A DNA stretch of 64,000 bases from Lepidodermella squamata (Eukaryota; Animalia; Gastrotricha), in assembly GCA_047495785.1 (NCBI GenBank), contig JBLDXI010000015.1, positions 3,472,001 through 3,536,000 of the forward strand, written 5' to 3'. The stretch's first letter is position 1, and each line of letters opens with the position of its first letter. Under the pieces are notes generated by a model that made no database searches, was not told the origin of the DNA, and saw nothing but the letters and a program-made list of their open reading frames with translations. The translations under genes were made by a program, and so were the position numbers. This document shows positions 1-21,200 of this stretch, piece by piece.

Positions 1-1310
1 CATCGCGCACACGCAAACAGAAAGTTCATCCGATTTTTATTCTATAATAAAGACATTTTTAAGAATATAATCAGCTAGTATATAAATTCCAATTATAACA
101 GCGCCTCTTTTGGTGCAAAGAAGAATATAGTGATACCTAAATATAATGTTATGTTCAAGTTCGTTTCAAATTTCCACAGCCAAAAAATCAATTATATATA
201 TCCCTGCTTAATACGAGAGTCATTATTACAGGTTGCAAAAACCACGGAGCAACTTTTACGATGTAGTCGTCTAGCGTGAATTCAGTATGTCAATCGGCAC
301 ACCATAATGATTATAATAATTAGCGTTGGATCAAACTGGGTAGCATAAATTTGTATGTTTGTGTATCAATTATTTTTTTCATCTCTCTGTACACACCGTC
401 TCACATGTGTTATTAGAGATTTGAGCCTCAGAAAATCAGGTTGGTACGTGCAATAATTTACTAGAACACCAATGTTGTTTTTTTACGCAATTTTTGTTGC
501 AAATAAATCAGCGCATAGTTTAAGAAACACTCATAACGTAGCAGCGTTATTCCTTGTTCGATTATTCACGTTATTTGTTTTTACAATCAGCAAGATTAGT
601 ATAATAATTAGTCAAAATAAAAAGACAGCATAGTGAATAATATTATATGAAGGACTGTAGTACAATTGTTGGTAGTTTTTCGCAATCAATCGATCGATCA
701 AATCAGTAGTGATATAGCCGGGAAACTGCAAAGAAAAGCTCGCACTGGGCATCTTTCAAAAAGTGATTGCCACATTCAAGATTCTAAATAGTAATGACAA
801 TAATAATAATAATAACCGTTTTCGGAATTTTTTAGCTAGCCGGACAAAAATTGGAATCATTTTTTTCAACTTTACAAACACACAACAGCGCGATCAACTT
901 CGTCGTCGTCTCAAGAAAGCGAGTAGGTATAAACAAAATTGTATTGCAGCTTTGTTACGAGTTTTCTTCATCATGGTTATAGATATATAATTTTTTTTAG
1001 TAATTTCAACCCCACGAGTAGTAAGACAGCCCTGGTAGAGGAGGATAACCCCATTTTCTAAGATAGCAGCGAAATTCATTTTTACGATAAGAAACGCAGT
1101 TTGGACGGTAGAAATGAACAACGCCTACTATTATATAACGGAAACACGTAATTCTCTGATTGATAAATGTATAAGATATATAACGCATTTATTTATAACA
1201 ACGTCCAATCTCTAGCCAGAAGAATGCATGCAGCCAATTTGACGTGACACACGGACGAGAAATTAAGTTGAATTTTGTGTTGTAGAAGACAAGAAATCGC
1301 CACCACCTGT

Positions 1311-2286
1311 TCAGCAGCACTTCTTAGCCGGCTGCTGTTGCTCGGTCGGGGCGACGGGAATCGTGGGCAACTGCCGACTTTGGTCTTCTTCTCGGCCGTT
1401 AGCCACTTGCCTTTGACCCATGTGCCGGAAAATTTCTAAAAAAAATTAAAAAAAAAACTTTTAAAATACCGCCTTAATATAACGAAATATCTTTTAGCAG
1501 AGCCAAATTTAACGAGTTTGCACCGAACGAAAATTTTGGCAAATTTTTTCAATTCATTCTGGAAATGAATCCTGCAGATCGCGGAGATTTTACGGTCAAT
1601 AATTTCGATTTTTTCAATTTATCGTTAAATTCCAAAAATTATAAAAATTCATTGAAAAAAGAGCGAATTTGAGCCGGAATTGGGTTTCACTAAAGGCAAG
1701 ACGTGTAAAATAATTGTGAATAGTTTGCCTGTTAGAATATTGTGGAAAGCAGTTTCAACGTTTGTTGCATCGAGAGCGGACGTTTCGATGAATGAAAGGC
1801 CATTTTTCTCGGAGAATTGACGAGCCTCCTCGGTAGGAACGGCGCGCAGGTGCTTTAGATCAGATTTGTTGCCGACCAGCATGATGACGATGTTGGGATC
1901 GGCGTGGTCGCGCAACTCCCGCAGCCATCGCTCGCAGTTGTCGAAGGTGATGTGCTTAGCAATATCGTATACTAGGAGGGCGCCGACAGCACCACGGTAG
2001 TAGGCATTCGTGATAGCCCGGTAACGCTCCTGACCGGCCGTATCCCAAATTTGAGCTTTGATTGTTTTCGCCTCGACTTGGACGCTTCGAGTCGCGAATT
2101 CGACACCTATCGTCGTTTTACTCTCGAGGTTAAACTCGTTTCGAGTGAAGCGAGATAGCAGGTTAGACTTTCCGACACCAGAGTCTCCGATTAGCACAAC
2201 TAAAATTCGCAAATAAATTAGCAACAATACAACTAGTAAAATTAGCACTCACTCTTGAATAGATAGTCATACTCGTCCGATGGCAT
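1311..2286 (-). CDS. RAB11: Rab11 small GTPase, 3 exons: 2286-2253, 2199-1729, 1435-1311 (209 aa)
   Basis: Spliced translation [39 protein letters not shown]...IGVEFAT...[13 protein letters not shown]...NKSDL...ETSAL...NILTEIFRHM...AKKCC* (C-terminal CC prenylation). Exon lengths 34+471+125=630 nt keep frame. Intron 2 has a GC donor. Confidence 0.97.
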
Positions 2287-2378
2287 TATAGGGATAGATT
2301 ATGCACAGGAAACACAACTTCAGTATAAAACCAACAAATTAGGTTGTCTACCTATGGAAAGAAATTAAACATCTGTAA

Positions 2379-3143
2379 TCAAAATTCTTGAGCAAATTTA
2401 AATTTAAAATCGAAGTATGTTCTCTCTCGATTTCCGGCCGGCGGTAAACTCGGATCAAACTTCGAAGCATTCGAATTCTGATTAGGCCGCATATTCAAAG
2501 GTGCATCCGGCAAGTCGGAATAATCCGCAATTCTAGCGAAATTCTTTCTATGCTTTACAACTTTTGGCTTTGGCGCCTCGGGTTTTGGGAAATCGGCAAC
2601 AATGGAGGCAAAAAGCCCTTTCGGTTTTTCAACCTCGGCCGTTTCAGTTGGAGCAGCCAGCTCGGTAGTAGTTATTTTATCATCAACGCGAGATTTTGGT
2701 AATATAGGACCATTATTCGGGATGTTTTTCGACTTTTTGAGATGCTTCCAAGCGTCCTTCACTTTCGCATCGTGACCATCCATTTCATCCGTACTCCGAG
2801 GATTCCATTTCGATTTCAGGAGTTTTGCAGCACCTGATGGACTGATCGGAAAATGCTGCGATATCACTTCTGGAGTCCAAACTTCAGGACTCTTCGCATG
2901 AAGAAATTTAATCTGCTCCTTAGCCGACCAGCTGAGAAGATTCGTCTCGACGGGTTTTCGAAAGTGCTTCTTTTCGACAGTTTTCATTTTCGTGACAAAG
3001 GATTGGGCTTTCGTAACTTCAGCAGGAACAGGTTTCAAACTTTCCTGGTAGATGTCCTCAATATCATTCGAGTTCGCGTCGATAGCTCTAGCAATTGAAG
3101 AAATTCTCAATTCACGACGAGCCAACTTAATAATTTTTAACAT
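2379..3143 (-). CDS. NGRN: Neugrin (mitochondrial 16S rRNA/mitoribosome assembly factor), intronless, 254 aa
   Basis: Basic presequence-like N-terminus (MLKIIKLARRELRISSIARA) and neugrin core LLSWSAKEQIKFLH...PEVWTPEVISQHFPISPSGAAKLLKSKWNP. Confidence 0.85.
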   Translation of the reverse strand: MLKIIKLARRELRISSIARAIDANSNDIEDIYQESLKPVPAEVTKAQSFVTKMKTVEKKHFRKPVETNLLSWSAKEQIKFLHAKSPEVWTPEVISQHFPISPSGAAKLLKSKWNPRSTDEMDGHDAKVKDAWKHLKKSKNIPNNGPILPKSRVDDKITTTELAAPTETAEVEKPKGLFASIVADFPKPEAPKPKVVKHRKNFARIADYSDLPDAPLNMRPNQNSNASKFDPSLPPAGNRERTYFDFKFKFAQEF

Positions 3144-3450
3144 TTTCTAAAATAAATAATATATAAAATCGTTAAAATTAGTCCTTTTAATTGGTACAAA
3201 TCCATACGACGAAAAGCAAATATCTTCATATTCACAACATATAAAAATGCGTTTGTTTCAACCGGAACGATAAGACACATAACACACCCAAATACGACCG
3301 ATGTTATAGTGTAACAGTAGGGAAGCATGGCTTTACTCAAGACTAGCGCGATCATGATTACATATTCCAGATTCCGTGTTCCCGGCAAAAATAAAATAAA
3401 ATAATATTGATCTTTTTTTCTCTCAGTGAAACAACTACTAGGTAACAAAA

Positions 3451-5352
3451 TCACATGCCGTCGAAGTGGAAATGCTGGGCTTCTTCCTCTTTCTCCTTCT
3501 TCTCAATACGCTTGTCACGGATATGCAGACCGCCGAGCATTATGAGGCTGATGAATGTTAGAATGCCGAGCATGATCATCACCGCAATCATAAACCAGTT
3601 TAGAAGGAGGAATGACTTGACAGCCCACGTTAATGGGTCGTGGTCCTTCTCAGCAATAAGGACCAGTTGCGAGTTGGGTATCACCAAGGTGTGTTTGAAG
3701 CTGCCGGCGCTAACGTTACCCGAGGTCATTTGCACGGCTAGTTCGTCGATAAACGGCGGCAGCTGACCAAGGCCCATCACGGCGTAAGGCAGTCCGAGGG
3801 CCATGTGAGAACTTCGTGGTGATAGCACAGCTTTTGCTGTGCTTGAACCGTAGGATATGCGAATCATTGTTCCAGGTAGAACAGCTGCGCTCATTTCTTC
3901 GACTTGTGGGTTGACAGATACTGAAACTTTAAGAAACGCCATGTCAGCCCCAGTTTTGATTTCAAAAGCTCCCATTTGAATTGAATTAGGGCTTGAGAAG
4001 TTGAAGAAAGTAGCAAGGACAGCCAAACGAGCATCGGGCGACACGTCAATGAACGTTGCAACGGCAGGAACGAGGAACTGGTCTTTCTTCTCCAGCAAGT
4101 CAATCATTTCAAAGCAACGATGAGTGCTATTGCAATTCGAGTTTCTAAACAACGCAATCAGGGGCAGTGAGAAGTCGCCGCTTTCTTTCTTCACAGAGAC
4201 GACGCCGACAAGATCCGTGAACCCATCGAGGTCAAAATCACCTGAGCGAACTGATGGATATGGAATAATACCAGAACTGCCATCGCCGTCCTTCGGAAAG
4301 ATCCATGCGAATTCAGTTATAGTTACTGGCAGCTTGACAGTAACATCCTCCCATGACTGAGATGTATTAAATGAGAGTCTCTTCAGCTTAGCCGAGCCGC
4401 AATAATTGAACAGGGTAGTTTTCGACGGGGTGAATGTTTCACAGGTGGGATACAGAATTTGCAGTTGACTAGAAGGATTTTCAATCGAAAGTACATGAGG
4501 CAGTCCTGTATACTTGGAACCCAATGAAGGAAGACTTTGATCTGCTTTCTTGAATTTTCCAGCATTATTAACGTAAACCGATTCACCAATGAGAAGATCT
4601 ACATACATGTCTGCGTCAACGGAAGCAAATAAGGACGGTAGCGGGTTGTTCGTCTGCCAATTTATGGGGCCATCGATGTATTTATCAACTTTATCCTCTT
4701 GCAAAGAAGAAACGGCAGATACCATTAGCACTCCAAGGAAGAGGCGGAATTGCCCATTGCTTCGGTCTCTTACAATTATGTCTGGAATCCAATCTCCGTT
4801 GGCATCTAACAAAATAGGCTGCTCGGAAATGGACAAAGCATCAAGGCCCTCTTCCTTTCCTTTCTCCAAAACGAGAAATCTACCACGAGTGCACTTGATC
4901 GAAGTGTCTGGACAGCCTAATAAATTACCCTGTGTGCCCTGAGTACCGTTACAGCTGCAGTAATAAATGTGTAGCGACAGCGCTTGGTTTTCATCCACAA
5001 CAACGACCAGGTCAATGTTATTATCCGCATTGAAGTCACCTGGTATCACACTCTTGATGATACCCTTAGTTTCTTTAACGGGTACTAGAAAGCCTGAAGG
5101 TTGAAGTCGTTCGTATTGAGTGTAACCAAAAGACTTCATCAAGATGACACCAACTGACTGCCTTGTCTTATCAAAAACTATCACATCGGTTGACTTGTCG
5201 CCGTTGAAATCTGTGATGGCTGCTAGCATCCAATCGTTTACATGCGACCCAAATACAATTGTGCTCAAGTCAGCGGTTTTCAGCGCAGAGCCAGAACATT
5301 GCTCCGCCAGAATAAAAGCTATCAAGAGCCTGATAACTGCATGATAGAACAT
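3451..5352 (-). CDS. ITFG1: ITFG1/LINKIN (T-cell immunomodulatory protein) type I membrane protein, intronless, 633 aa
   Basis: Signal peptide, FG-GAP/VCBS repeats (DFNGDKSTD, GDFNADNNID, DANGDWIPD, GDFDLDGFTD), LPYAVMGLG, VIPNSQLVLI, one TM helix and the diagnostic C-terminus EEAQHFHFDGM. Confidence 0.93.
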   Translation of the reverse strand: MFYHAVIRLLIAFILAEQCSGSALKTADLSTIVFGSHVNDWMLAAITDFNGDKSTDVIVFDKTRQSVGVILMKSFGYTQYERLQPSGFLVPVKETKGIIKSVIPGDFNADNNIDLVVVVDENQALSLHIYYCSCNGTQGTQGNLLGCPDTSIKCTRGRFLVLEKGKEEGLDALSISEQPILLDANGDWIPDIIVRDRSNGQFRLFLGVLMVSAVSSLQEDKVDKYIDGPINWQTNNPLPSLFASVDADMYVDLLIGESVYVNNAGKFKKADQSLPSLGSKYTGLPHVLSIENPSSQLQILYPTCETFTPSKTTLFNYCGSAKLKRLSFNTSQSWEDVTVKLPVTITEFAWIFPKDGDGSSGIIPYPSVRSGDFDLDGFTDLVGVVSVKKESGDFSLPLIALFRNSNCNSTHRCFEMIDLLEKKDQFLVPAVATFIDVSPDARLAVLATFFNFSSPNSIQMGAFEIKTGADMAFLKVSVSVNPQVEEMSAAVLPGTMIRISYGSSTAKAVLSPRSSHMALGLPYAVMGLGQLPPFIDELAVQMTSGNVSAGSFKHTLVIPNSQLVLIAEKDHDPLTWAVKSFLLLNWFMIAVMIMLGILTFISLIMLGGLHIRDKRIEKKEKEEEAQHFHFDGM

Positions 5353-6251
5353 CTAAAAAGCGAATTCAAGTATAATTTAGCGAGTAACTCAAAACAAGAG
5401 CCAGGTAACATTAAAAAGCCGACCATCCACGAGGGCGAGGAACAGGACACTTGATCAACAAGAAACTAGTTAGACCTATCTAACAATGCGAGGGACGAGG
5501 GAATATAATGAATAATGAAAAAACAGGGCTAACGGTTGAAAAGCGAACTAATCTCCAATCGGAAAGGTGAAAACATAGAGAGCAAGTTACAAGTTTTTGG
5601 TGAGAGCGAAGCCACCGTATTTATTTTATTCTATATTTCTTACAAGGGAGCGACCAGCAAGCACCATAATTCGCAGGCCTTTAGGACTGCGTCTTATCTC
5701 AGCGTCCAGTGCGTCGACAGACGAGATCATCGTTCGCAGCGGCTCAGAGGTCGGTTAGTTTAACACTGTCATCCCCGAAAAATCTCACCCTTCGACATAC
5801 TTTCTTGCGAATCGTAAAAAAATTTCCCAGTGTGATTACACCTCGAAAACATTTAGGACAAAATATTTCATTTAACTAATAATACTATTGTAAAAAAATT
5901 CGAAAACTGCGTTTACGCGGTAACTTTTTCTTTTGATATCCTACCGAATCTCGCAGAGCCCGCTAACAAGAGTGACGCAAGTTTGCCGCTAAGGCGGCCG
6001 CACCTTTTGAAGCAGCATGTGCATTTTGCGTAGATAGTTGCCCCGTCATCCCACGCTACAATCTAAGTTATGATTTCGAGCTGTAATCTGCCCGAATTTT
6101 TCTTAGAAATTCTTTGATTCAGCCTGGTGTCAGCTGAACGCTTTTTTTACGATGCAAGGAGACCTTTATTATAGGTTCCTCGAGCTATCTACTTGTGCTC
6201 TTTGTGTCCAGTTTGACAGCCCTTGTCGTAAAACTTGCAATTGTTGTTTAG
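5353..6251. promoter_or_regulatory. Divergent (head-to-head) intergenic region between ITFG1 and VPS13D
   Basis: The two ATGs point away from each other about 900 bp apart. Both are immediately preceded by pyrimidine tract + AG (ctttttag|ATG and ttgtttag|ATG). Promoter function is inferred. Confidence 0.5.
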
Positions 6252-9200
6252 ATGTTGAGTGGCTTTGTGAAGTGGGCCGTTAAAAGCTACTTTGACGAAC
6301 TTCTCGAGGATGTAGATTGCAATCAGCTGTCGCTTGGTCTCCTTCGAGGTACGTTCAACAACTTTCTAGCAGATGTAATTAATAATTTCAACTCGGTTCC
6401 TCAGGCCATGTCGAGTTAACAGATTTAACAATATGCAAGAAAGGTCGATTGTTATCGAAGCTATTTCCAATATTTATTGAATCTGGTAAGAGCTGGCTAA
6501 CTCGAGACTTTCCGTATGTCAATATTCTTTTCATTTAGGTCATGTTGATTCCTTAACGCTGAAAGCCCCTCTAAAACTATTTGGAGACGAGTCTTGGTTT
6601 CTATCCCTCAACAATGTATCAATAGATTGTTGTTCCAGGCCTCTTCAGAATGAATATGTTAGTGAAACCTTTCATTGGTTTACTCAACAATTCAGCGTTA
6701 CTCGTTTTTTGCAGGAATTACTCCAGAACCACAGAAAAGAAGCGCTTTCTCGAAAGTTCAGCGAGCTTGCTCGATTGGAAGATAGCTGGAAAGTAGAGTC
6801 TCTCGGCCATGCCAAAATTCCATGGGCTGAGCTGGCGACTTCACTGGTTTTTCAGATTTTGCGAAATATTTCAGTATATTTTGGAAATCGTAACTTTGCG
6901 GAAAGCTTGAGGAATTACTGATTTTCTAGGTGACAATTGACGTATTCAAATGCAAAATATCTATCGACAACGACTCATCGCTAGTGATAGAAGCCGATTT
7001 GGTGAAAGTTGAGCAAGACGTCTCGGTCGCCCCTCGATGCGCTAAGAACGTGCGAATCTCTGGATTGCAAATTTCGTTGTTGGAAACTAGTAATCGTGTA
7101 ATTCTTTGCGGCCCGGTAGATTTTAGTGGTAGCGCTGATATCACATCCGACGAAGAATCGCCCCTTAATTTTGACTTCAAGTTGGATAACCCCGTTCGCC
7201 TCAGTGTTCCTCCTAAGGCGTGTGAAGGTATTAGCTTGTTCGATTATTTATTTTTTACTATGCGGTATTTTCTTCTTGACAGTAATATCCTGCTTCATGA
7301 AAGATGTAGCTGCCTTGTCGGAAATCTTTAGGCTGCGGGACGATGCACTATTGAGCCCTGTAACTTCAAAGTAATACTCCACATCTCACTTGATATGTAT
7401 ACGTTAAGTGTATTCATATTGATAGCGCGAAATTATGGTGGAGACATGCGTTGTGGCTTGTGAGTTCCAAGCAACGTCGTTTCAGCCGGCTCCGGTTTCA
7501 GAAAAGACTTCGCCAGGCGGCAATATACTCAAAAGCCTATTACCAATGGCTAAAGTTTGAGTATGTCGAGATTGCTTTAAAGAAAACTCGCGAAGAAGTA
7601 GAGATTACTTGGCCCTCTGACTTACTCATCAACCTGCGGCAGATTGTTTTACATCGCTTTTTATCGGATACAAAGCGGTTAAGCGAGAGAGATTCGATCG
7701 TTGTAAGCCAGAAATCACTGGATCAACCTTCTTCACGCTCGGCTTCTCAAGGATGGTTGCGATCAATGTCTTCTTGGGTCGGATTAGGTCGAAGTAATTC
7801 CCAACCTGATTTGCTGCTCGACCAGGCTGATTTATTACCCAGTGATACACCACCTGTTGCTGAAGAGGCGAAAAAGTTGAAAGGGAAACCAATATCAATT
7901 ACTGGATTCATTGAAGCGCTCTCATTTAATTTTGGCGTGAAAGAAGAAGTGGAATTTCAGATGCAATCGCTAGCGTTTAAAAGCGAACCCGGAAATACTA
8001 ATTTTTTAATAAGTTCTATCAACGTTATTGCTAATGAAGCACAGCTAGCAAGCGTCGGAAATGGTGAAAACAAGTCACTCTGTGTTGAAATTTCGAAAGA
8101 AGAGGCTGCAACGCAGATCGACGTTAAAGTTCACGGGCCTTCCGTAACGATTAGTCCCAAGTTTATGTCGTCCGTGTTTGACACCGTTGGTGCTTATAAT
8201 TTTGAAAAAATTGGCGAGATATCCTCGGCTTTCAACCACATAGCTTCGAAAAGCAAAAGCGAATCGGTTAAAACAGCACATACTGCTTACTTATTGGAAA
8301 TTGCGAGTCCTTCGATTCAATTCGATGCAACTGAGCGATCCGAGGTTGTTTTGACCTCCAATAACTTGATATTGCGGTCAGATGATCCGCAAGAAGAGGA
8401 TACCTCTAAATTTCAGATATCATTGGACCAATTAAATCTGAAATCGAGCAAAGGATTGGAAATACTTCACATGAACAGCATGAACTGTAATTCTTCAAAT
8501 TCGCTATCGAGTACGGTGTTCGATGTAAAGCTGGCAAATAACAGTCTTTCAGTATGTTCGCAACTAGCTGAAGTGGCCTTCGATTGCGCAGAAGCGGCTA
8601 AATCAATTGTGACTTTGGCAAAATCAGTTAAACTTCCAACTAAAACACCACAATCAAAGCCGTCCAAGGCATTTTGTATCAATGTTAATCTTCCAGATAC
8701 CACACTTTCCTTAGCCGACACATCTGGCATTGGAATTGTTGATTTTCAGCTTACTAACATTGATTTTGTCGCGGATTTGAGTTCGTCAAGAACTGAATTT
8801 GCCATCGGAGGCGTTGAGCTCGGCCAACCGAGCCTTGAATCGTTGAAAGATGTTGCATTAAAAGGCTCATCGAATGGCGAGGAGACTTCATTTTTCTCTT
8901 TCGAAGCTGATTTTACCGAAAACGAGGGCGTGGAGAACAAGGTTTTAAGTATAACCGTCGCTGATATTGAGCTTCGATTGAATCCTCAGTTTTTACGAAT
9001 CTTCACCGAGTATATGCAACAAATGCTGGAAAAAATCCCGCACATGCCCAAGTCGAGTCAAAAAGAGCCATCTTCTTCGTCCCCGTTCGAGTTTGTTGCT
9101 TCTCTGGCTAGTTTCGATATGATTTTGCTATCGAACCAAAATGCCCCACAAGCGACAAGATTGCTTGTTAAGGACTTTCAAGCGCTTCGCTCGCAATCTT

Positions 9201-12200
9201 CAGTTCTGGAAGTTGCCTTCGATTTTATCAACGTGAAATTTGAGGACGAAAAGCCTCGCTCGCTAATCAAATCTTACTCAGACCCTGATAGCTGTTTCCG
9301 CCTTAAATTTGATCCAGCCGAAAGTTCGCTATCCATCGCAACTGTTTGCTTGGACGTGTTTTTGGATCCAAATGCGTTAATTTGGCTGGCATCCAATTAT
9401 ATGGACAGCTTTTTGCAATCTAAACCAACCAAGCTGAAAGATGAATCGGAAAAATCGAGTGAAATTACCGGTGGGAAAATTAAAGGAATCGTATTTTCGT
9501 CCGAAAAAACTCGATTATGCCTCGATGGCGATCTTGAAATTTCAATCGGAGGAATTGGTCACAAAATTGGTGAACATGTTGATTTTTCAAACTTGACGGC
9601 GAAAAAGACATCAACATCGCTGTTATTGTTAAGCATCGCTAATTTCGCGATATCATCTTCAAAACACGAGGAAGATGCTCAGATTGTTTCTTTGATTAAA
9701 ATCTCCAGTGATCGAGTTATTAGACTGTCATGGAGTGTTTTGACCGAAAACTTGATCAAGGAAGTAATATCGGTTTACTCGAAAATGAGCGATGAAATCG
9801 GGAAGATTAGCGGCAGAACTGAACGAGCCGAAATTAAAAAATCATCACCCCGTTTAGAGGTCGAAATCAGCTCGAGATCATTCGACATCGCGATTTTGGA
9901 CCCGTTTGAACCAAAACGCGAAATCGTGCACTGTTTACTGCAAACGCCCATCGTTAAATTCGTGAAACCCTGCGAAAATGATTCAAATATTGAATGGGAA
10001 CTGGCGGTAAATGCGAATATAGTTCGTTTAGCGGACTGCATGTTCGATGTTGTTTTATTCGAATGTACTTCCGGCTCTGAGAAGGCCGGATCTCGCTCGA
10101 GTAGTTTGCCACTCTCCTCGTCATACCCAGGCGTATCAGCCGGGTCTTCGTTCACTGTGAACACGAATTACCTATTAAGGCCACTACCGCCTGTTCCAGA
10201 TTTTTCTTCGAGTCATCTGGCGATAAACCCCTTATTCCGGCTAAACGTGACAAGTGAAAAAACGGCGAGTGGCGCTTGTCGTAGGGTGGTTCACGCCAGT
10301 GCTGAAAATGGCTGTTCGTTATCTTTGACCGAAAAATGCCTACCGACCCTGTTAGAGGCGGTCGGAGTTGGAGCGAAAATGTTCCCGGTCATAACAACCG
10401 CCGATCAATTCGGCCGGCCAATTCACCGGCTCGAGAAGGAAATCAAACCATCGCCTGATGTTTTCGAATTCACTTTCTCGGCAAATTCTGTTCATTGCCG
10501 GTTGATGACCGGCGAAACTTTGGCGACGTCCTTCGTCTCAGCCCATGCCTCGGACGGTGTGCAACTTTGCTTCTCCAGCGTAGCGAATGTTCATCGACTG
10601 GACGGCTCTTTCAGCGCTACATCGCTCCAACTTTTCGACGATTCGAAGGATTTCGGCTCGTTATATTCATGCCGAGCCCTAGCTTCGGGCCTCACGGTTG
10701 AATTTTCAAAGGCCGGCCTACCCGATTACGAATTAACGCTGTTTGACTACGAAGTTCTGGCGAAAGTTAACATTGAAACAGTGAGTTACGTTCACACGAA
10801 GCGAATTTTCGTGGCGATTCTCGATTTCGTCGACCATTTGATGCAACATCGCGAGGCGTTGGCGAAAAAAGTCGCTAATCTACTCAAAATTCCTTGCCAA
10901 GAACTGCCAGGCCATGGCGCTCGACTTGATCTACAACTTACCCTGAACAACCCGACAATTGTTGTTCCGATTAACTATTCATCCGAGAAATCTATGGTTA
11001 TTCGATTAACCGACCCAATTGTTGCGACGAGCGCGTTTGCTTGGCAGGGCGAAAAAGGCACGAATTTGTGCACAAATAGGACTAATTCGTCGATTCCGCA
11101 ATTGCACCCGAAATTGGTCGCCCTCAAGCTGCACGAGCCATCAGCTAGCGATGGCTCGTCGATTTACCCGTGTTTAATCAACATTTTACGCTTTGAAGTG
11201 ACTGGGGCGAGCATTTATGACGGGACTTGGCGGCAACCTTCAATGTACCCGGAGGAAGTTGACCCAAATATTGAGGTTCTCGATTTTCTCAATTACAACA
11301 TTGAGGTTCATCGCGATACTTCCTGGTCGCAAACGCCGATTTCGCTCCTAATTCACATGGAACGTAACCTGGACGGGAATTTGAGTCGAAATGCGCCGGA
11401 TCTAGCGGTCTCGGTGCTTTTCGATAGACTGAATCTCGACGTTTCACGCGAGCAAGCCACGCGAATTTTTGTCATTCTCGATAAAAATTTCGGCGAAGAT
11501 TTAGGTGGACCGCCGCCTCAAGCAGTTCCGGAAAATATGACGTCATGGAAAAATATCGAAGTGGTTCTTTACGCGCAAGCCTGCCGCGCTAATTTGTTTG
11601 ACGATAATCACGAAGAGTTGGTCGGGGTTCGCCTTGACCCGGCTGCGTTGTCATTTTCCCGCTTTTCGAACAACTCACGAACGATCGATTTTAAATGCCA
11701 CGAAGTATTTCTATCCGACATTCGAGCGAATAAGTTGACTAACTCCGCGCCATTCATGGCCTTTCCTGTACTTGGTAACCAGCCTGATTCGATGCAATTC
11801 GAACTGAATTATTCGGCTAATAATGACTTGGTTCGAATGGGGTTCATGTTATCCTACGTTCGCATCGTTGTTCTAGGCGATTTTTGGCAACAGGCTACGA
11901 AATTCGTGACTAGCATCATGCAAAATCAAGACAACAACCAGCCCCCAGCAGCGTCAGTCGACCAAGGCCATAAATCAGCAGTTTTCGCAGTAGGGGATGA
12001 TGTGGTGTCCAGGGCCCCGTTACCGCCGAATGTGGCGCAAAAGCGCTCTTCCTCGATCAGAGTCAGCCTTCATCGGTCGGAAATTTGCTACCTGCTACCT
12101 CAGAGCGGCGATTTTCGGGGTTTCCTAACTGAAGTCACTGCGATTTTAGTCATGAGCCCTACCCGCTCGTTAACGCTGAACATTCCTTCGTTCAAAACCA

Positions 12201-15200
12201 GCAGATTGTCGAGAGATGATACGCCTGGTGAGACTGTTGCTGTTTTGACCAGCTTTATTGGCGATATTTCCCACGAAAACGGCGGCGATCAGCAGGATCC
12301 AGCGAAAAATGTGGGCGTTCTAGAGGTGGTCCTGCCACCTTCGGATATGCGTTGCGAAGTCACGCTTGGATCACTTCGAATTGACGTTAATCCACAGCTT
12401 ATCAACACCTTGAAAAATCTTACATCGGCATCTAGTGATACGGGCCAGAACGCGGTGAATTTGAAACCAGCGGCTAACACGACGCCTCGAGATACGCCAC
12501 TATCAGTGTTGTTGAAGCTTTATCCGGAACTTGCGAAAATTAAGGTGGATTTAATGAAATTATTATTTCAATTTTCTAATTGTTTTTAATTTCTCTAGAT
12601 TTCACTGTCACTTGTCGCATGCAATCTCACCATTGATGCCGCGCCTGTAATTACTGTAACACTATCTGGTATGTGGTTAATTTATTGGATAAATGGTTGA
12701 AATTTTGTATTTTTTCTTCAGAAATGGTGTTTGAGCAAAATCTATTCGCAAGCCTTCCCGGTTCGTTCGCGCTGCGATTAGCTTGTCGCTACCACAACGC
12801 CGCTGTTTCGAACTGGGAGCCTCTGATCGAATCGTGGGGCGGCCAACTCGCGTGGAGAAATGACGGATCGCATGCGAACGAACTGCTAATATCGGCTACA
12901 TCGGACAAAGTGTTCAACGTGAACATCACCAGTGCTCTTCTTGAACTGATCACCTGGTTGAAACAAAATTGGAACGTTCCTGAATCTCTTCAACATTCGC
13001 TGTAAATATTATTCAGATATATTTAAACTTCGAACTAATCGAACCATTTTTTACATAATTTAGACCTGATGTCACTGCGATTTCGTCTTCATTGCGTTCC
13101 GAGAGCCACCATGCTGTTCGTCCATTCATTCTGGTCAACAAACTCGAGCTGCCCCTCCAGTTTTGTGTCCAGCAATCGGATATGTGGACAACAATTGATC
13201 CTTCTAACAGCGAAAGGCAATCGATCCTAATTGCCGCGCCGAACCAGGAAATCGAATTTGGGGAAAATTTTTGCCCGACTTCATCCCTGAGTTTGGCCGT
13301 GAAAATTACCGGGTTTCAAGCGATTCCTTTGCCTATTCCAGTCGACGCTCTTGGTATCGTTGTTCGCTCGACCTTACCTGAGAGTCTGCCACCTAGGACT
13401 GGGAAGAAGATGTCGAATGCGGTTAATCCGACCAGAATCATATTCCGGGTAACGCTGAATCGAAGGCGGCAGAAAGTTATCTACGCTGAATCAGCTGTTA
13501 GATTGGTCAATCGATTACCGCACGGCCTTGCTCTGACTTTTACGGACAACACCGAGGAAGATCCAGCCACGCTTGGCGCGGTGGTCACCCTTGATACAGG
13601 CGAGTCAGTGCCGCTGCCTTTGGTCAATCTCTACAAGTTGTTGTGGTTCCGGCCTTTAAAACCTGGCATCGGGTTTTGCCGGTCGCCAGTGACCTGGCAA
13701 CACGTCACTCAATCTGGGTTACCGGAAAATGTCCCAGTTTACTGCCAATCGCGGCAAGACAGCCGGCCTTACTATTGCATTGTTTCTATTGCGAAACGGC
13801 AATCGCACTTTTCAACCGATACTTTAACCTCAACATCAGATCCGTGGCATATGATAACAATATCAGCGCCTATCGTCATTCGAAATTTACTACCCTGTGA
13901 TATGAATTTCGAGTTGACCTCGTCATCAGGCCGTAGTGGGGCTCCAGTTGCTAACGACAACTTGCAATCAGGCCGCACGGCTCGTCTTACTGCACTAGAT
14001 GCAGACTCGAGCAGTTTGAGTTTGTCGGTTAAGCTGGATCAATACCCGTACTGTACCCCGGTCTCTGTCATGGTCGGGCGATCAAATTTATTCGTCCTGG
14101 ATGAGGCTAAACGGCCTCTTCGGTTGACTATGTCCACAGAGCGGTCAAGACACGGTGTCCTTGTGGTAAATTAATTAAATTTCGAATTGATCTGATAAAT
14201 TAAGGTGGATTTTTTTTCAGATTCGAATCGAGTGCAGTTATTGGCTGTATAACAACACAAACTTGCCACTGATTTTTCGCCAACATTCCAACTCCTTGCC
14301 TACAATGGACACCAGTCCTTACCAGCCTAATAACTATTCGACATCGTCAGATTCAGAAGAGGGCCATCACGTGATAGCAGCTGGCCAATCGCCAGAGTTT
14401 GAAGTTGCAAGAAGCGTTGTGCCTCTTATGTTCAGTTTCGACGACGAAGAATGGCAATTGTACGTAAAAAATTTAAATTCTTTTTACTGTAATTTTTCTT
14501 CATCAAATATAAATAATATAAATAATACAACAAAATACGTAAATGCTTAGCTGTGCAAGTGTACATCAGTTGAATTTTTATGAATTAGCCGTCTCCAAGG
14601 TTGTGTTTTTTTCTGTCGATATGCGTCCAACGTCATTTTTTAATTGAGCAAGTTGGCGCTGTTTTTCTTGCCACACGCGAAAGACTTGATTCCAATATTG
14701 TTGTTTGACGCTCGTGATCAAACGTTTTCATTCTCCGACTCAAGCACCACCAAGATTGTAGGACCGTTGTGGCTGTAATAAGGCATAGGTTGATCCATCG
14801 GTAGGACAGGGTGTCTAATAATCGGGGTGCTGTAATCGCTTGCAGTTGGTGATGTTTCCACGGGTTGTGCCGCGGTTTTGATGACAGGAGTGCTGTAGTC
14901 GCTAGGTTCAGGAGATTTTTCGGCGCTTTGCCCGGAATGGTGACTCAACTGAGGCGATTCGCTGGGTAGCAGCCGCTGATCATTCTCCTGCGTGGTTTCT
15001 CGGTAAATCGAGCCTCGCCTGCTTTCCTCCCCAGTTGGCGGGACTACTGATCGATCGCCATGGTTATTAGATGCCCAAGTTGAGTGCCGAGGAGCCCATT
15101 TAGGACAGAACATGTGTAGTGCCTTGAATATTCGTAAAATATTATTAAAAAATATATCAATATTGGCAAAAATGACCTCTTGACGGAATCGGGTACCACT

Positions 15201-18200
15201 CAGCAGATAAGTGTAAAAACTGAGCGAATGGTTCAGGTATAGGGCTAGGGTGCATACTAGCTCAGCGATCGCCATTTGATTTTTGTATCGCGTTCTTTCC
15301 GGTCCGGCTGGTAAATCACTCGAGTGGGTGAATCGCCAAAAATCCAGGATAACATTGGGCGTTGTAAGCAACAGGAAAGTGAAGCTAGCCGCGACTAACA
15401 TGATTGTCAGCGATCTCACTGTGCTGTCCTGGTGATGTTGCTGAGTTGCTTGTTTCTTGCATTTGCCCTCAAAATCTTGGTGAATCTAAGCAAATTTGAA
15501 AAAATGTAATCTTAAGCTGGATTTTATTCATTATTTTTACCTTGCAAATGATGATTGTGTTGCAAACACTGAATGAAACGAATGGACCAAGGACGTAAAT
15601 TAGCAGCACGACGTAGGGCAGGTGGTCTTTCCAGTATTTTTCTGCCCCAGGTGACGTATATCCGCATTCGTTGCGAGATTCTGAATGATGAACTCCTCTA
15701 GTTACGAAAACGTGGCTGTTGAGAGCCATCGCACAGCACGTTATGATGAAAGCTGCCAGCCAAATTCGGCGTTGAGTGAAAATTAAATTCGCCTTTAGCG
15801 GGTTGATCACAGCTATCAGCCGGCCGACGTTGAGGGCAGCCAGGTTCCAAACCGATGAATCAAGCGCGCTATACACGATGAACATGTGAATTTTACACAA
15901 CATGTAGTGTTTCAGCCTGATGTCGTATCCGAACACGATTTTGCCGTAATGCCGCGTTAGGCCCGTCAATAAAATGATACAGTCGAAAAAAGCGATTAAT
16001 CGTAGGGCGAGGCTGATTGCTGATCGCCTGATAGATGGCCGATTTAGCACGATAAGTGATAAAATATTCCCAGTAAGCCCGGCCAGAAATAAAAACGGTG
16101 AGATGTAGGTCCACAAAACTGCCGTATACTAAAATTGGTTAAATTACAAGAAAATTTCAAATTGAATATGAGATAAGCAAACCTCGTTTGTTTCGCTGTC
16201 CCGGTCTAACAGTGTTATATTGGTAATTGGTAGCACTGTGACACTGAAGTCGTCCATAGTTACAGAAAATTCTTGCGAAATTTCTTCAGCTGGTGGATTG
16301 CTAATAACAGCGAAGTTGCATCGACCTAGAACGATAAATAGCCGTTGTTTTTGTATTATTTGTATCTAAATCAGGGCATTTCACTTGGGCATATTTAGAC
16401 GAAGTGTGGGCGCGCTATATTCGCGCTAAGCTCGCAATCGCTAGTCATTTTCTATAGTAAAAAAGCGCTGATTTCGAGCAAATGCCGAGACTATTAAAAT
16501 CGTATCATCGATACGGTTTTGAATGCAGCAATCAGTGCCGTAGCGCGGCGAGCGCGTGTGATAATTTGCAACTAATTGACTTGGCATTCAGCTCCATTGA
16601 AATTGATTTTGCTCTCAGCCTATCGCAGTATTGAGACCGGATGTGTGTTCATCACTTGGTCTGCGGGTATCAATTGAGATCCGCTAGACATCATTGCCCT
16701 GAATAATGTCGCAGGAGGATTATTCTAGAAAATTGCTGTGGATATTTGGAATTTAACGGAGGAGTGAACTTATTTCTCCCGCGACTATTTAGCGGGTATG
16801 GTTGAGTATAAACAAATTTTTCTATTTCGCAGTATAAAATACATACATGATATAAAGCACGGCGTGGCGAATGACAGGAAAAAGACATGTATTTTGACAA
16901 ATAGATAGAAAGGCATTTTTGGCAAATAAAATAACAGGCAGGAAGAATTTGCGAGCAAATAACACGAGAAAACTAGATCGATTTTCTGTCTATGTGTTCC
17001 ATCCACCGTGTTGCGATTGGAATTCTTCGGCACGATACCCGATCTCAGTCTTATTTGTGACATATTTGGTGCTAATGAACCACCACCCACTACTTGGGTG
17101 TAATAAAATTACCAAAAATTTACCGATATTTTTGTTACCTAATTGGGCCGTAGTGGTGTCGTTGGTGTTGTTATTGCTGGTCGTGTTCATAATCGCCGAT
17201 TTGTTCACCGATAAATCTCCCGACTGGTTGGAACGTGCGTCATTTTTGCGATCCGCCGACTAGATTTTGATCGCTTCTTAGTTGCCACTACCTGACAAGC
17301 TGCTATTAACGCTCGAGGGCATCATCGCAGGCACTATAATTGGATTCTCGACTGATGCTTTCATACGGCGGTCGAGAATTCGCTGCTACCTTTTTTGTCG
17401 CCGTGAGAAATTTTGGCGGAAGTGATAAAATTATTATCAGGCAGCGGGCGAAAAAAATCGTGGCGGCTATCTATAGTTGCTTCTTCTATATTTGGCGGCT
17501 TAGCGAATTAAACTCAAGCGCGCGTATAAGGACGCCAGGCTATATTAGGCATGATATCGGCGACGAATCGGCGTATTCACACGACCCGCAAATCTTATCA
17601 AGAAAATACGCTTCAGGACCTACTATTATTGGACTAATATAACGTGGTAAAATGTTACGTTTTATTTAGTAAGTGATTGAAAGCGTTGAAATTTTGTTAT
17701 TCGAAGGCTCAAATACTATAATGTAATGTTTAGCCGTGGCGTTATTCAATTACAAATTTTGTTATTCGGGCAATTTTGTATCGATTTGGCGAGCTAGTGA
17801 ACAGTTTCCGGCTTTCTAAGTCTGGAATCTGCGGGCGGCTATACTCGAAGCGGCCCGCGACTCGGAAAAAGTATTGTTTAGAAATATCAAGGTGTAAAAA
17901 TTGCGGTAACGAGTGTTAGTTGGACCAGAAGGACATGAATTGCAAAATGCATATATATGTGACGCGTTTTGCACTAATACGAGATCGTTCTTTTTTTTTA
18001 ATTTGGCTGGTGTGAAAAATCGATAATAATACTTACCCGACTACAATTTATGCGTATATTGAGTCTGGGCCGCCAACTCTGATGATCGCTGCTAAGTTGT
18101 TCATTTATTAATTTCGTGCGATCGAAAACAGTTGAGACATAAGAAGCTGATCATATTGAAACAACGGATGAAACTGCGGATATTTTGTGCGGTGTTTTCG

Positions 18201-21200
18201 ATTTTTTCCGCCGGCTCTGCTTAGTCTGGCACATTGTGTACCAGAAGAGTCTTAAAAACTCGCCCGTTTTTTTTCTCCGTTTGATGTGTCTATAATTGGA
18301 AAGTTTAGAGGGCGTGGGGATTTGCGGGTTTGTTTTATACATGCAAGTATACTGCGAAGTCTTTATTCACTTGGAAGCTGGTTCACCATTTTATTATTAT
18401 TATTTTGTTACATTCGCCCCTGGTTTTTATGGTATATACAAATGGCTATCTCTACATGGAATATTACTGGCACGCGAACAGAAAAAGAAAAATAAAGAGC
18501 AGCAGAAATAAAGGCATAATAATAATAATAATAATAATGGTGATATTATATTAATTTATATTCGATAAATTGGTTTATAACAGTAAAATGAAGGATTTTG
18601 TTGCGAATGCAGACGGACTAAAAATCATCACTGTTAATGAGATTTGGCGTTGTTTTGCTGGTGGTGGTGAAAAAACGTCTCAGACATAGATTTTTCGTCC
18701 TGATTCGCTCGCGCCGCCGTTCCCCTTAGTACCGCCACTGGCTCCCTCGCTTAGCCAATACATTTGCTGTTGCTGCTGCTGGGGCATCATCATCATACTA
18801 TTGCTAGGCAGAGTGCCGCCTTGAGCCACTGCCTGAGCCGCTGCTGTCATTAGCGAAGTATGCTGCTGCCGATGCGCTGTCCCGTTGCCATTCAGCGTTT
18901 GATACTGGTAGTGATTAGGCACCAATCCTTGCTGCTGGTTGTTTTGAACACCATAAGCGCGACTAGCTGTAGGGTAATACGGCTCGTTTGTATGAATCAG
19001 AGATAGCTGTTGAGGCGGCGGCGGTGGCGGCATTTGCGCCGGCCGGTTGCTCCGGCTCAGCGTCGCCTGGGTTAACAACTTCCCAGCATCAATCGGCGCA
19101 ACATCGCTCGGGCTAATCGCTATCACCTCATCATATTTATGCTTTTTGCCAGACGATGTCGACTTTTTCCGAACCGGTGTCTGTTTTTTCGAGGAATGAT
19201 GGTGGTTGTGGTGATGCTTAGCCTTGCTATCGTGGTGGTGACTCAGGTGCTTCGGATTACTGCCCACCAAACTGCTGTGATCTTCGTTATCTAAACAGCT
19301 TTGATCGCCGAAATCTGAGTCTGATTCATCGAGAGACGCGCGCGGCTTTTTCCGCTTTTTCGACTTGGATTTCTCGTCTTTCGGCTTCTTTTCGCCGTAC
19401 AGCCCCATCGTCGACTCGGTCATTGCCGGGCAAAGTTGCGGCGCCGCCAAAAACATGAACGGCAATTTTATGACGCAATTTAGCAGCTGCGCGAATAGCA
19501 CTAAGGCTCGCATCGACGGATGGACGGTTATATTCATGAAAAGTTCCATCGCTGCCAAAACTGCGGTAGGTGCCAATAGGATTGCTTGAACTGCGGCTAG
19601 TAGCGCGAACAGCACCAGAAGATTTATTTTCAGAAGTTTGTATTTGTGCTGCTTGTGTTTGGCATCTGCCTTGTTTATAGCCGGGTGGCATCTGCCCTGG
19701 AAACTTAACGTCAACACCAGCAAAACAGCGGCAAGGGTCGGGCCTGAATTTCACAAGAAAAATTATTGAAATAAAAAAATATATATTCACGCATACCGAT
19801 GACATTGATGATAACACTGACGATCGGGTGAACGTGCAACCAAAAAATGCGAGCATCCGGAAACGAATAACCGCATTCGTTAAAAGTGTATAGCGTACCA
19901 TATTCGCCCTGCACTTGCAGTCCTGTGATAAACAACAACAAAAATAAAATGAAACAACCAAGAAAACAAATTTTAATTGACTAACCTCGGGTGATAAGAT
20001 TTTGTAAATTAAGGAGGAGCGACATGATAGTGGCGTAAATGATGAGGCGACTTGCTGGGCGCCACAATTCGCATAGGCCAAGCGGAACAAGCCAAACACT
20101 GAGATCAAGTGCGCTCGCCAGCAAAAAGTGACGCATTTTACACGACCAAGGGTGCAAGTGATCGAGACTTATCGAAAATAACCGGTCTATCGCTAAACGG
20201 CCAGCTCCAAGGACGATGCAAATCAAATCTAAAAATGATTGAGAAAAAATGCTTAAAAAATTTGACAAAAATTAAGGTGGAATTTTTCAGATGTTTTAGA
20301 TTATTTTGAATTTTTTGAATTTTTGAATATTATTAAAATTTTACCTGCAATAGCGATAGTTGCGATGAAAGCCACGCCGGGTAGTTTGTGCCGTAGCCGG
20401 CAGCAAAGCGCAAGTTGAATGGCGTTTGTGATAATTCCAAGAACTAGAATAACGATAGGGCTGTAGTTGAAAATGTACAGCGTCGAACGGCGGACGATGA
20501 ATGGCAAGCTGCCGCCGTCGATGCTGACCGATGATGCTTGGTCGAAAGCTTGATTATTCGGAAGAGGTGTCGACTCATCGCCCGCGTTTATGTACACAGT
20601 TTCCGGCTGTATGTATATCACACCGGGCGGTGGATCGCTAACGTTAAGATCCAACCAGGCCCAATTGCTTTTCCAATCGGCGTAACTTCTTTCCTAAAAA
20701 AAATTGAAAAATTATTAGGAAAATTAAGGTGGTTTGGTAAACTTACTTCGTCTTGTAGCCATTTCGAAAAATATCGTATACTCATAATTTTATTATATTC
20801 ATATAATTTTTTTACTTCGTTTTTTATAAAATTTCCTATAACAATATAATAATTTGTCTATGTATTTTTTCAGCTGCCAGATGCGGTTGGGCAAAGGCCT
20901 CCACTATCCTGCGTTGAAGCCGATATGGTAAGTTGCAAAAATGAGAAGAATGATACGCGTCATTAGGCCGTATTTTTAAAATACCTCAAGCTCAATTTGT
21001 TAGCAGCGGGAGAAAAAGCCCGGCTAGTTGATTAGCCGAGCGGCTCACAGCGAGAAATCAAACTGTGATAATATATATGGCGCGCAAAAATTTTCTCTCG
21101 CCGCGCGGCGGCTAATTTTTGTCAGCGCGCGCGCCCGCATGCGGTGCAAAGGGACAAAGTGGTAGCTTTTCTGTGATGTTATATAGTCAATATATAAAAA

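What the first reader, a model, noticed from the sequence alone, without database searches (positions are those of the whole stretch)
1311..5352. Operon-like cluster ITFG1 > neugrin > Rab11 with unpaired splice acceptors (spliced-leader trans-splicing signature)
Seen: three unrelated housekeeping genes on the minus strand separated by only 307 bp and 92 bp (stop to ATG). Between ITFG1 and NGRN an ATTAAA (3191-3186) is followed by ACTAAT, a U-rich tract and ttattttAG (3148-3147) three nt before the NGRN ATG. Between NGRN and Rab11 a tttctttccatAG (2353-2352) lies 27 nt after the NGRN stop. The ITFG1 ATG is directly preceded by ctttttAG. Known: poly(A) signal, short U-rich spacer and an acceptor with no upstream donor is the layout of SL-resolved operons in nematodes, tunicates and flatworms. 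Inference: a polycistronic unit processed by SL trans-splicing, possibly in a lineage where this has not been described.
Basis: partly seen in the sequence, partly recalled or inferred. Interest (0 to 1): 0.8.

Follow-up and report, generated by a model that had tools for sequence, protein, structure and literature searches.

The report
Spliced-leader trans-splicing at a conserved gene cluster
Three tightly packed housekeeping genes sit in an animal genome that pastes a common short leader onto its messenger RNAs; this is shown for the first gene only, so the operon reading is likely but unproven, and the mechanism itself is already known from other animals.

Summary
ITFG1 (3451-5352), neugrin (2379-3143) and Rab11 (1311-2286) lie on the minus strand, 307 and 92 nt apart, and every motif is at the stated coordinate.

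An RNA contig covering all of ITFG1 carries 21 non-genomic letters joined at the AG before the ATG. A DNA contig reads straight through that point. The leader (…TGCGAATTTGATTTGTGTCTAAG) is absent from the window. It occurs exactly once in a metagenome contig, followed by GTATGT and hairpins, beside a 5S gene in an rDNA spacer. That is a spliced-leader (SL) RNA gene.

A distant relative (ITFG1 42%, neugrin 39%, Rab11 core 99% identical) keeps the same three genes in the same order. Its spacers cannot be aligned to the window's, yet pyrimidine-AG sites sit at matching places.

Not shown:
- the leader on neugrin or Rab11, whose 5' ends the RNA contigs do not cover;
- any polycistronic precursor;
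- the same leader on several genes.

The RNA depths (about 146, 40 and 500) and the empty spacers give the operon reading no support.

The lineage is unresolved: a long-branch marine animal with no close relative in the protein databases. The leader matches no printed leader I could check. The scan's first readers flagged similar clusters elsewhere in this genome; none had been followed up.

Verdict: new member of a known kind.

The parts
5353..5354 (-). Trans-splice acceptor AG of ITFG1, immediately before the ATG
   Evidence: RNA contig (run X1, 1910 nt, depth 146) fits 3466-5354, then continues with 21 letters that are not in the window. The DNA contig of run X2 reads through.
5355..5538 (-). 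Outron of ITFG1: pre-mRNA upstream of the acceptor, minimum extent
   Evidence: A low-depth RNA contig (3.3, against 146 for the mRNA) covers about 5358-5538. The transcription start was not determined.
3451..5352 (-). ITFG1 / T-cell immunomodulatory protein coding sequence, single exon, 633 aa
3353..3450 (-). ITFG1 3' UTR, with the probable mRNA end near 3353
   Evidence: RNA contig 7 of X1 ends at 3353 with 30 unlaid letters. X1 depth in 3183-3352 is zero by arithmetic on the depth table. This is inferred; no poly(A) tail was displayed.
3144..3352 (-). Spacer between the ITFG1 mRNA end and the neugrin ATG. Holds ATTAAA (3186-3191), the branch-like ACTAAT (3177-3182) and the candidate acceptor AG (3147-3148).
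   Evidence: Sequence. No RNA contig lies here. The relative has a pyrimidine-TAG 12 nt before its neugrin ATG, and its stop-to-AG distance is 306 nt against 304 nt here.
2379..3143 (-). Neugrin coding sequence, single exon, 254 aa
   Evidence: 39% identical to the relative's neugrin. RNA contigs cover 2341 to about 3120 at depth 17-37 in two haplotypes.
2352..2353 (-). Candidate trans-splice acceptor of Rab11 (tttctttccatAG), 27 nt after the neugrin stop and 65 nt before the Rab11 ATG
   Evidence: Sequence. The relative has ctttcttttttcctggcAG 31 nt after its neugrin stop and 45 nt before its Rab11 ATG. Its use is not shown by RNA. The neugrin RNA contig runs 11 nt past it, to 2341.
2318..2319 (-). 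Alternative acceptor AG (tatactgaAG), downstream of the apparent neugrin mRNA end
   Evidence: Sequence only. Not conserved in the relative.
1311..2286 (-). Rab11 coding region: exon 1 2253-2286, exon 2 1729-2199, exon 3 1311-1435; intron 1 is GT-AG, intron 2 is GC-AG
   Evidence: Exon 2 is 155/156 identical to the relative. RNA depth about 420-620.
1181..1310 (-). Rab11 3' UTR, with AATAAA at 1188-1193 and an RNA contig end at 1181

Best explanation
The window comes from an animal that matures mRNAs by spliced-leader (SL) trans-splicing. A small SL RNA is encoded beside the 5S gene in the rDNA spacer. It donates its 5' exon (at least 23 nt, …TGCGAATTTGATTTGTGTCTAAG, followed by a GTATGT donor) to unpaired 3' splice sites just upstream of start codons.

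Shown:
- The ITFG1 mRNA starts with this leader, joined at AG 5354/5353, so its AUG directly follows the leader.
- A weakly represented outron lies upstream of that junction.

Inferred:
- Neugrin and Rab11 receive the same leader at AG 3148/3147 and AG 2353/2352. Pyrimidine-AG sites are kept at the same relative places in a relative whose spacers are otherwise unalignable.
- The three genes form an operon-like unit, in which 3' end formation of the upstream gene and trans-splicing of the downstream gene happen within one short spacer.
- For neugrin and Rab11 the two events would overlap, because the neugrin RNA reaches 11 nt past the Rab11 acceptor. One precursor could then yield only one of the two mRNAs.

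My odds:
- SL trans-splicing in this genome, 0.95.
- Neugrin and Rab11 also trans-spliced, about 0.65.
- True polycistronic transcription of all three, about 0.4.

The confidence given for this explanation (0.55) is for the composite: an SL-accepting, operon-like cluster.
For: -: RNA contig with a 21-nt non-genomic 5' extension at 5354. The DNA contig of X2 is continuous across 5354. A low-depth outron contig lies upstream.
- the leader is absent from all 64 kb, even allowing 3 mismatches, so it is not a nearby cis exon.
- exact leader followed by GTATGT, about 130 nt upstream of a 5S gene (114.6 bits) in an rDNA spacer after the 28S end.
- both the SL gene and a variant gene in a related rDNA unit fold into hairpins, followed by a U-rich element.
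- the only close ITFG1 relative lies in the same VPS13 | ITFG1 > neugrin > Rab11 arrangement, on contigs from three metagenome assemblies.
- the spacers are unalignable, yet the acceptor-like sites are conserved in position.
- a second cluster (Rogdi > NFU1 > FRS2) shows the same pattern in both species.
Against: - Only one contig of one gene shows the leader. The same leader on other mRNAs was not seen.
- The SL gene was found in a metagenome contig, not in this assembly.
- No RNA contig lies in 3183-3352 or 2228-2340, so no precursor spanning a spacer is seen, although a 3.3-deep outron contig of ITFG1 was assembled.
- Contig depths of about 146, 17-37 per neugrin contig, and 420-620 for the three genes fit separate promoters better than one. 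Contig depth is a poor measure of expression, however.
- The roughly 200 nt between the ITFG1 mRNA end and the neugrin acceptor could hold a promoter.
- The Sm site is not canonical, and no consensus structure could be derived.
Confidence: 0.55

Rival explanations
1. The three genes are merely close neighbours with their own promoters. SL trans-splicing trims the outron of each gene (or only of ITFG1), as it does for monocistronic genes in nematodes and tunicates. No polycistronic RNA exists.
For: -: zero RNA contig depth in both spacers, and roughly 10-fold depth differences between neighbours, with Rab11 far above the upstream neugrin.
- The whole neighbourhood is syntenic in the relative, including the opposite-strand VPS13 and its nested receptor. 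Conserved order therefore need not reflect an operon constraint.
Against: - Only 25 nt (window) and 29 nt (relative) separate the neugrin stop from the conserved Rab11 acceptor AG. That leaves no room for a promoter outside the neugrin gene.
- Neugrin RNA overlaps that acceptor.
- Layouts this tight are the criterion used for SL operons in Oikopleura (up to 60 bp, PMC7986045) and chaetognaths (under 250 bp, PMC12460157).
Confidence: 0.33
2. The AGs before neugrin and Rab11 are ordinary cis acceptors of 5'-UTR introns, or are unused. Only ITFG1 is trans-spliced.
For: - No RNA evidence at these two sites.
- Acceptor-like motifs occur about 8 per kb per strand.
- Two ATG-led ORFs of OPLAH that look the same (56834, 59634) are internal exons.
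Against: - No joint to an upstream donor was reported in the RNA contigs.
- Positional conservation in the relative despite unalignable spacers.
- The same pattern at NFU1 and FRS2 in two species.
Confidence: 0.1
3. The 21 extra letters are an assembly chimera or an adapter, and there is no spliced leader.
For: A single contig from an assembler. The raw reads were not available.
Against: - The letters, together with the two shared AG bases, match 23 of 23 a sequence that is followed by a GT donor beside a 5S gene in an independent metagenome assembly.
- Degenerate copies lie in a second rDNA unit.
- The junction falls exactly at an AG.
Confidence: 0.02

Closest known systems
Caenorhabditis elegans SL1/SL2 trans-splicing and operons
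   Same: - Short leader donated by a small RNA whose gene sits next to the 5S rRNA gene (the 5S-SL1 cluster is named in the abstract of bioRxiv 10.64898/2026.01.07.698080, listed).
- Acceptor close to the AUG, and an outron upstream of the first gene.
- Co-oriented genes a few hundred nt apart.
   Different: - The leader sequence is unrelated, and there is no Rfam SL1 or SL2 match in the window or on the SL-gene contigs.
- No canonical AAUUUUGG Sm site.
- No evidence for a separate SL2-type leader for downstream genes.
- Here the SL gene and 5S lie inside the 18S-28S rDNA spacer.
Oikopleura dioica (appendicularian tunicate) single-SL system with operons
   Same: - One leader serves first and downstream cistrons, and intercistronic spacers are very short (PMC7986045).
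- The leader shows a weak likeness: ACTCAT lies 20 nt upstream of the observed 23 nt in the gene, and the 3' end GTCTAAG resembles GTCTAACAG of the O. dioica SL printed in PMC6883708.
- Marine plankton context of the relative.
   Different: - The likeness is marginal (56 of 2000 shuffles reach its score).
- The window's proteins are not in the database, and no O. dioica protein appears among the best hits.
- The ITFG1-neugrin spacer (307 nt) exceeds the 60-bp operon criterion used for O. dioica.
- The SL-5S linkage in O. dioica is my own recollection; the original paper was not readable.
Chaetognath SL trans-splicing and operons
   Same: About half of the genes are trans-spliced, operons are defined by gaps under 250 bp, and SL genes are said to lie often in rDNA clusters (PMC12460157).
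   Different: The printed chaetognath leaders (36 nt, GGAAGCTTAT…TTTAAA; PMC2481426 table 3) share nothing with this leader.
Copepod, Ciona, Hydra and Schistosoma leaders
   Same: The same mechanism. Copepod SL genes can also be clustered with 5S (PMC4664967).
   Different: None of the printed leaders matches: the 46-nt CopepodSL and caligid-type leaders, and the Ciona, Hydra SL-B and S. mansoni leaders. S. mansoni shares only the octamer TGATTTGT.

Membership tests
Spliced-leader trans-splicing (generic) | The mRNA 5' end carries a sequence not encoded upstream of the gene, joined at a 3' splice site AG | tested here: met
   For ITFG1 only. The RNA contig switches to 21 non-genomic letters at 5354, the DNA contig reads through, and the leader is absent from the 64-kb window.
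Spliced-leader trans-splicing (generic) | The same leader on many unrelated mRNAs | not testable with these tools
   The single read-laying run was used and only assembled contigs were served. The contigs do not reach the neugrin or Rab11 5' ends. This organism's transcripts are not in the protein or contig collections.
Spliced-leader trans-splicing (generic) | The leader is the 5' exon of a small SL RNA gene, followed directly by a GT donor | tested here: met
   L002 has …TGCGAATTTGATTTGTGTCTAAG|GTATGTATC…, an exact match. It lies on a metagenome contig, not in this assembly. The scan's notes s1-373945 and s1-374104 report the same layout in this genome's rDNA but are unchecked.
Spliced-leader trans-splicing (generic) | The SL RNA has stem-loops and an Sm-binding site | tested here: inconclusive
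   Each gene folds into hairpins (z -1.6 and -2.5), with a U-rich stretch after the last hairpin (CUCUUUAUAAAAG and CCCUUUCUUGA). There is no canonical Sm consensus, and no consensus fold comes from the two sequences.
SL-resolved operon | Co-oriented genes separated by short spacers | tested here: met
   307 and 92 nt here; 318 and 76 nt in the relative.
SL-resolved operon | Downstream cistrons are trans-spliced at acceptors in the spacer | not testable with these tools
   Only positional conservation of the acceptor-like sites is available. There is no RNA at those sites.
SL-resolved operon | A polycistronic precursor, or a single promoter | tested here: inconclusive
   No RNA contig lies in 3183-3352 or 2228-2340, and the depths are unequal. 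Contigs drop rare molecules and a filter hides some records, so absence is weak evidence.
Nematode SL1/SL2 RNA families (Rfam) | Match to the covariance models | tested here: not met
   No Rfam match in the window at gathering score. On L001 and L002 only rRNA genes match at E up to 0.01.

The most novel reading that the evidence does not exclude
The genome belongs to a long-branch marine animal lineage in which spliced-leader trans-splicing and operons have never been described. In that lineage the SL RNA gene is carried, with 5S, inside every rDNA unit. The ITFG1 > neugrin > Rab11 unit would be an ancient operon, kept while its proteins diverged to about 40% identity, with overlapping and mutually exclusive 3'-end formation and trans-splicing at the neugrin/Rab11 boundary.
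Probability: 0.3. Interest if true: 0.65.

Novelty: new member of a known kind. Interest (0 to 1): 0.45.

Why it matters
- Annotation. The first readers flagged dozens of operon-like clusters in this genome. This work supplies what they lacked: the leader sequence, its donor gene and one proven junction. With the leader in hand, every trans-spliced 5' end and every operon can be called from existing RNA-seq, and gene starts can be annotated correctly.
- Evolution. SL trans-splicing is scattered over animal phyla, and its origins are debated. A new lineage, or a second well-diverged species pair with conserved clusters, would allow a test of whether operons freeze gene order.
- If the organism turns out to be an appendicularian or another group with known SL trans-splicing, the finding is routine.

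Tried and rejected
- Exact look-ups of ITFG1 and neugrin in the assembly collection found nothing. The RNA run's ITFG1 differs by V57M, and the organism is not in the collection.
- Literature searches for the leader and its parts gave only chance hits. WGS prefixes JACCDR and OGCL01, and Oithona plus trans-splicing, gave nothing useful.
- Two key papers (PMC507004, PMC2844618) are not held.
- Identifying the organism failed:
  - word-based homologue searches with ITFG1, NFU1 and Rab11;
  - a full HMMER search, with names looked up for the top 18 hits. These are slow-evolving members of many phyla: amphioxus, centipede, priapulid, barnacle, scallop, cuttlefish, bichir, limpet, octocoral, acorn worm and nemertean;
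  - an NFU1 tree, which is an unresolved polytomy with a long stem;
  - the protein atlas, which only confirmed ITFG1;
  - scan notes searched by words.
- Lineages set aside:
  - chaetognath and calanoid copepod, on leader sequence;
  - Fritillaria-like appendicularian, because the two relative introns examined are GT-AG;
  - Oikopleura dioica, because its proteins would have been found.
- Searching the scan notes by sequence with the SL gene was blank.
- The opposite-strand joints at 5381-5538 in a 3.3-deep RNA contig have no inverted repeat in the DNA. I treat them as an artefact.
- Spacer alignments between the two species show no conserved blocks.
Full report
**Observation.** The minus strand of 1311-5352 holds three unrelated genes.
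- ITFG1 / T-cell immunomodulatory protein: one exon, 3451-5352.
- Neugrin: one exon, 2379-3143.
- Rab11: three exons, 2253-2286, 1729-2199 and 1311-1435. Intron 1 is GT-AG; intron 2 is GC-AG.

The stop-to-ATG gaps are 307 and 92 nt.

**RNA and DNA runs.** Two searches found one RNA run (X1) and runs X2 and X3 that hold the stretch. Only assembled contigs were served. I laid them on 700-6400.
- A 1910-nt X1 contig (depth 146) fits 3466-5354 and then continues with 21 letters that fit nothing. In mRNA sense these are TGCGAATTTGATTTGTGTCTA.
- The two bases at 5354-5353 (AG) are shared by the leader and the acceptor, so at least 23 nt of leader are seen, and the ITFG1 AUG follows them directly.
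- An X2 contig, which behaves as DNA because it covers introns and spacers, is continuous from 2614 to 5697. The genome therefore does not encode the leader here.
- A 3.3-deep RNA contig upstream (about 5358-5538) looks like residual outron.
- The leader is absent from the whole window, even with three mismatches. A cis exon would have to lie more than 58 kb away, beyond a large opposite-strand VPS13 gene.

**The donor gene.** One scan of public metagenome contigs for 20 nt of the leader gave two hits.
- In L002 the exact leader is followed by GTATGTATC, two hairpins and a U-rich stretch. About 130 nt further downstream lies a 5S rRNA gene (114.6 bits). Both genes are antisense to a 28S 3' end on the same contig.
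- L001 is a related rDNA unit running 28S, 5S, spacer, 18S. It carries a variant gene with the same build (…AACCATCAAGTTTGATATTTCCGATACAG|GTATGTAT…, hairpins, CUUUCUUGA) plus four truncated copies of leader+GTATGTAT.
- This is the anatomy of an SL RNA gene.
- No Rfam family matches it.
- A TATA-like box sits 30 nt upstream of ACTCAT in L002 and of GTTCAT in L001. The full leader may therefore be about 43 nt, with the RNA contig truncated. This is inference.
- Two unchecked scan notes (s1-373945, s1-374104) report an SL-like gene upstream of 5S in every rDNA unit of this genome. That agrees with L002, but I could not read those pieces.

**Comparative evidence.** A full HMMER search with ITFG1 found one clear relative (P0124: 42% identity, E 2.5e-129). 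Every other hit was at 40% identity or less and far weaker, E 8.8e-39 or worse.
- P0124 and a near-identical cluster member (P0273) lie on contigs from three metagenome assemblies.
- The order there is the same: VPS13 with a nested 7TM receptor on one strand, then ITFG1 > neugrin > Rab11 on the other.
- Neugrin is 39% identical and the Rab11 core is 155/156 identical.
- The spacers cannot be aligned.
- Even so, a pyrimidine tract plus AG lies 7, 12 and 45 nt before the three ATGs in the relative, against 0, 3 and 65 nt in the window.
- The Rab11 site lies 31 nt after the neugrin stop in the relative and 27 nt after it in the window.
- The ITFG1 stop-to-neugrin AG distance is 306 nt in the relative and 304 nt in the window.
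- A second cluster, Rogdi > NFU1 > FRS2 (scan note s1-374264), is also syntenic in the relative, with acceptor-like sites 8, 17 and 7 nt before the ATGs.
- Overall, 8 of 12 starts have such a site within 20 nt, against a background chance of 0.16 per start.

**What is not shown.**
- Arithmetic on the depth table shows no X1 contig in 3183-3352 or in 2228-2340.
- The neugrin contigs stop near 3120, short of the ATG.
- Rab11 exon 1 is not covered. The tool warns that conserved, human-like records are filtered out, so this dip means nothing.
- The leader on neugrin and Rab11, a polycistronic precursor and a single promoter therefore all remain untested.
- Depths of about 146 (ITFG1), 17-37 per contig (neugrin) and 420-620 (Rab11), together with the empty ITFG1-neugrin spacer, lean towards separate transcription, at least for Rab11. 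Contig depth is a weak measure, however.
- The ITFG1 contig ends at 3353, so the ATTAAA at 3191 is probably not its poly(A) signal.
- The neugrin contig runs to 2341, 11 nt beyond the Rab11 acceptor. If that acceptor is used on the same precursor, polyadenylation of neugrin and trans-splicing of Rab11 exclude each other. This is inference, and it could also explain the low neugrin and high Rab11 levels.

**Mechanism proposed.** Pre-mRNAs carrying unpaired 3' splice sites are trans-spliced to the rDNA-encoded SL RNA. ITFG1 loses an outron of at least 185 nt. Neugrin and Rab11 probably receive the leader at the conserved sites, either from a common precursor (about 0.4) or from their own short outrons.

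**Comparison with known systems.** The layout is that of SL trans-splicing with operons, as in nematodes, tunicates, chaetognaths and flatworms (PMC7986045, PMC12460157).
- The leader matches none of the leaders printed in the papers I could read: chaetognath, copepod, and Ciona, Hydra and Schistosoma.
- It shows only a marginal likeness to the Oikopleura dioica leader (PMC6883708; 56 of 2000 shuffles score as high).
- No held paper contains it.

**Lineage.** The organism could not be placed.
- Its proteins are absent from the databases.
- The named best hits are slow-evolving species of many phyla.
- The NFU1 tree is a polytomy with a long stem.
- The relative's contig names begin CAOS20-1. 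I read this, from memory, as a study code for an ocean metagenome, probably polar. That would point to marine plankton.
- An appendicularian is my leading guess, but it is unproven.

**Verdict.** This is a new member of a known kind. Its interest is moderate, and would be higher if the lineage proves new for SL trans-splicing.

Noticed in passing
L001:2440-2600 (minus strand): A related rDNA spacer carries four truncated, degenerate copies of the leader plus the first 9 intron bases (TGCGAATTTGATTTGTGTCTAAGGTATGTAT), next to a complete variant SL gene. Scan notes report several retroelements converging on one short site in this genome's rDNA spacer. Whether that site is the SL exon, as with SL-specific retrotransposons, is worth checking.
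   Followed up: no
window 1436-1728: Rab11 intron 2 has a GC donor (CAG|GCAAAC … TTTTTAG). The intron is absent from the relative's Rab11 (L004:13540-13550 is continuous).
   Followed up: partly
window 908-1100: An abundant RNA contig (depth 574) ends at 1100 with 24 A's on the + strand. This suggests a polyadenylated convergent transcript that ends about 80 nt from the Rab11 mRNA end (1181). No ORF was recognised in 1-1100.
   Followed up: no
window 7451-27017 (+) and 15469-16116 (-): A very large, intron-poor VPS13-like gene (one exon of 1712 codons) runs divergently from ITFG1. It hosts a rhodopsin-type 7TM receptor gene on the opposite strand. A 7TM receptor gene also lies beside the VPS13 exons in the relative (L004, L005).
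   Followed up: partly
window 45625-60356 versus L003:12161-16218: 5-oxoprolinase spans about 15 kb with kb-sized introns in the window but about 4 kb, almost intron-free, in the relative. The two genomes differ strongly in intron load.
   Followed up: no
window 3147-3451 versus L004:11866-12172: The distance from the ITFG1 stop to the neugrin acceptor AG is 304 nt in the window and 306 nt in the relative, although the sequences cannot be aligned. This may be chance or a length constraint.
   Followed up: no
window 2436-3088: Neugrin is markedly polymorphic. The same alternative alleles (for example at 2475, 2476, 2667, 2716 and 2792) appear in the RNA run and in the DNA run, and two haplotype contigs cover 2500-2643.
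   Followed up: no
window 5381-5538: A 3.3-deep RNA contig shows strand-switch joints here, but the DNA has no inverted repeat. This is probably a library artefact within outron reads.
   Followed up: yes
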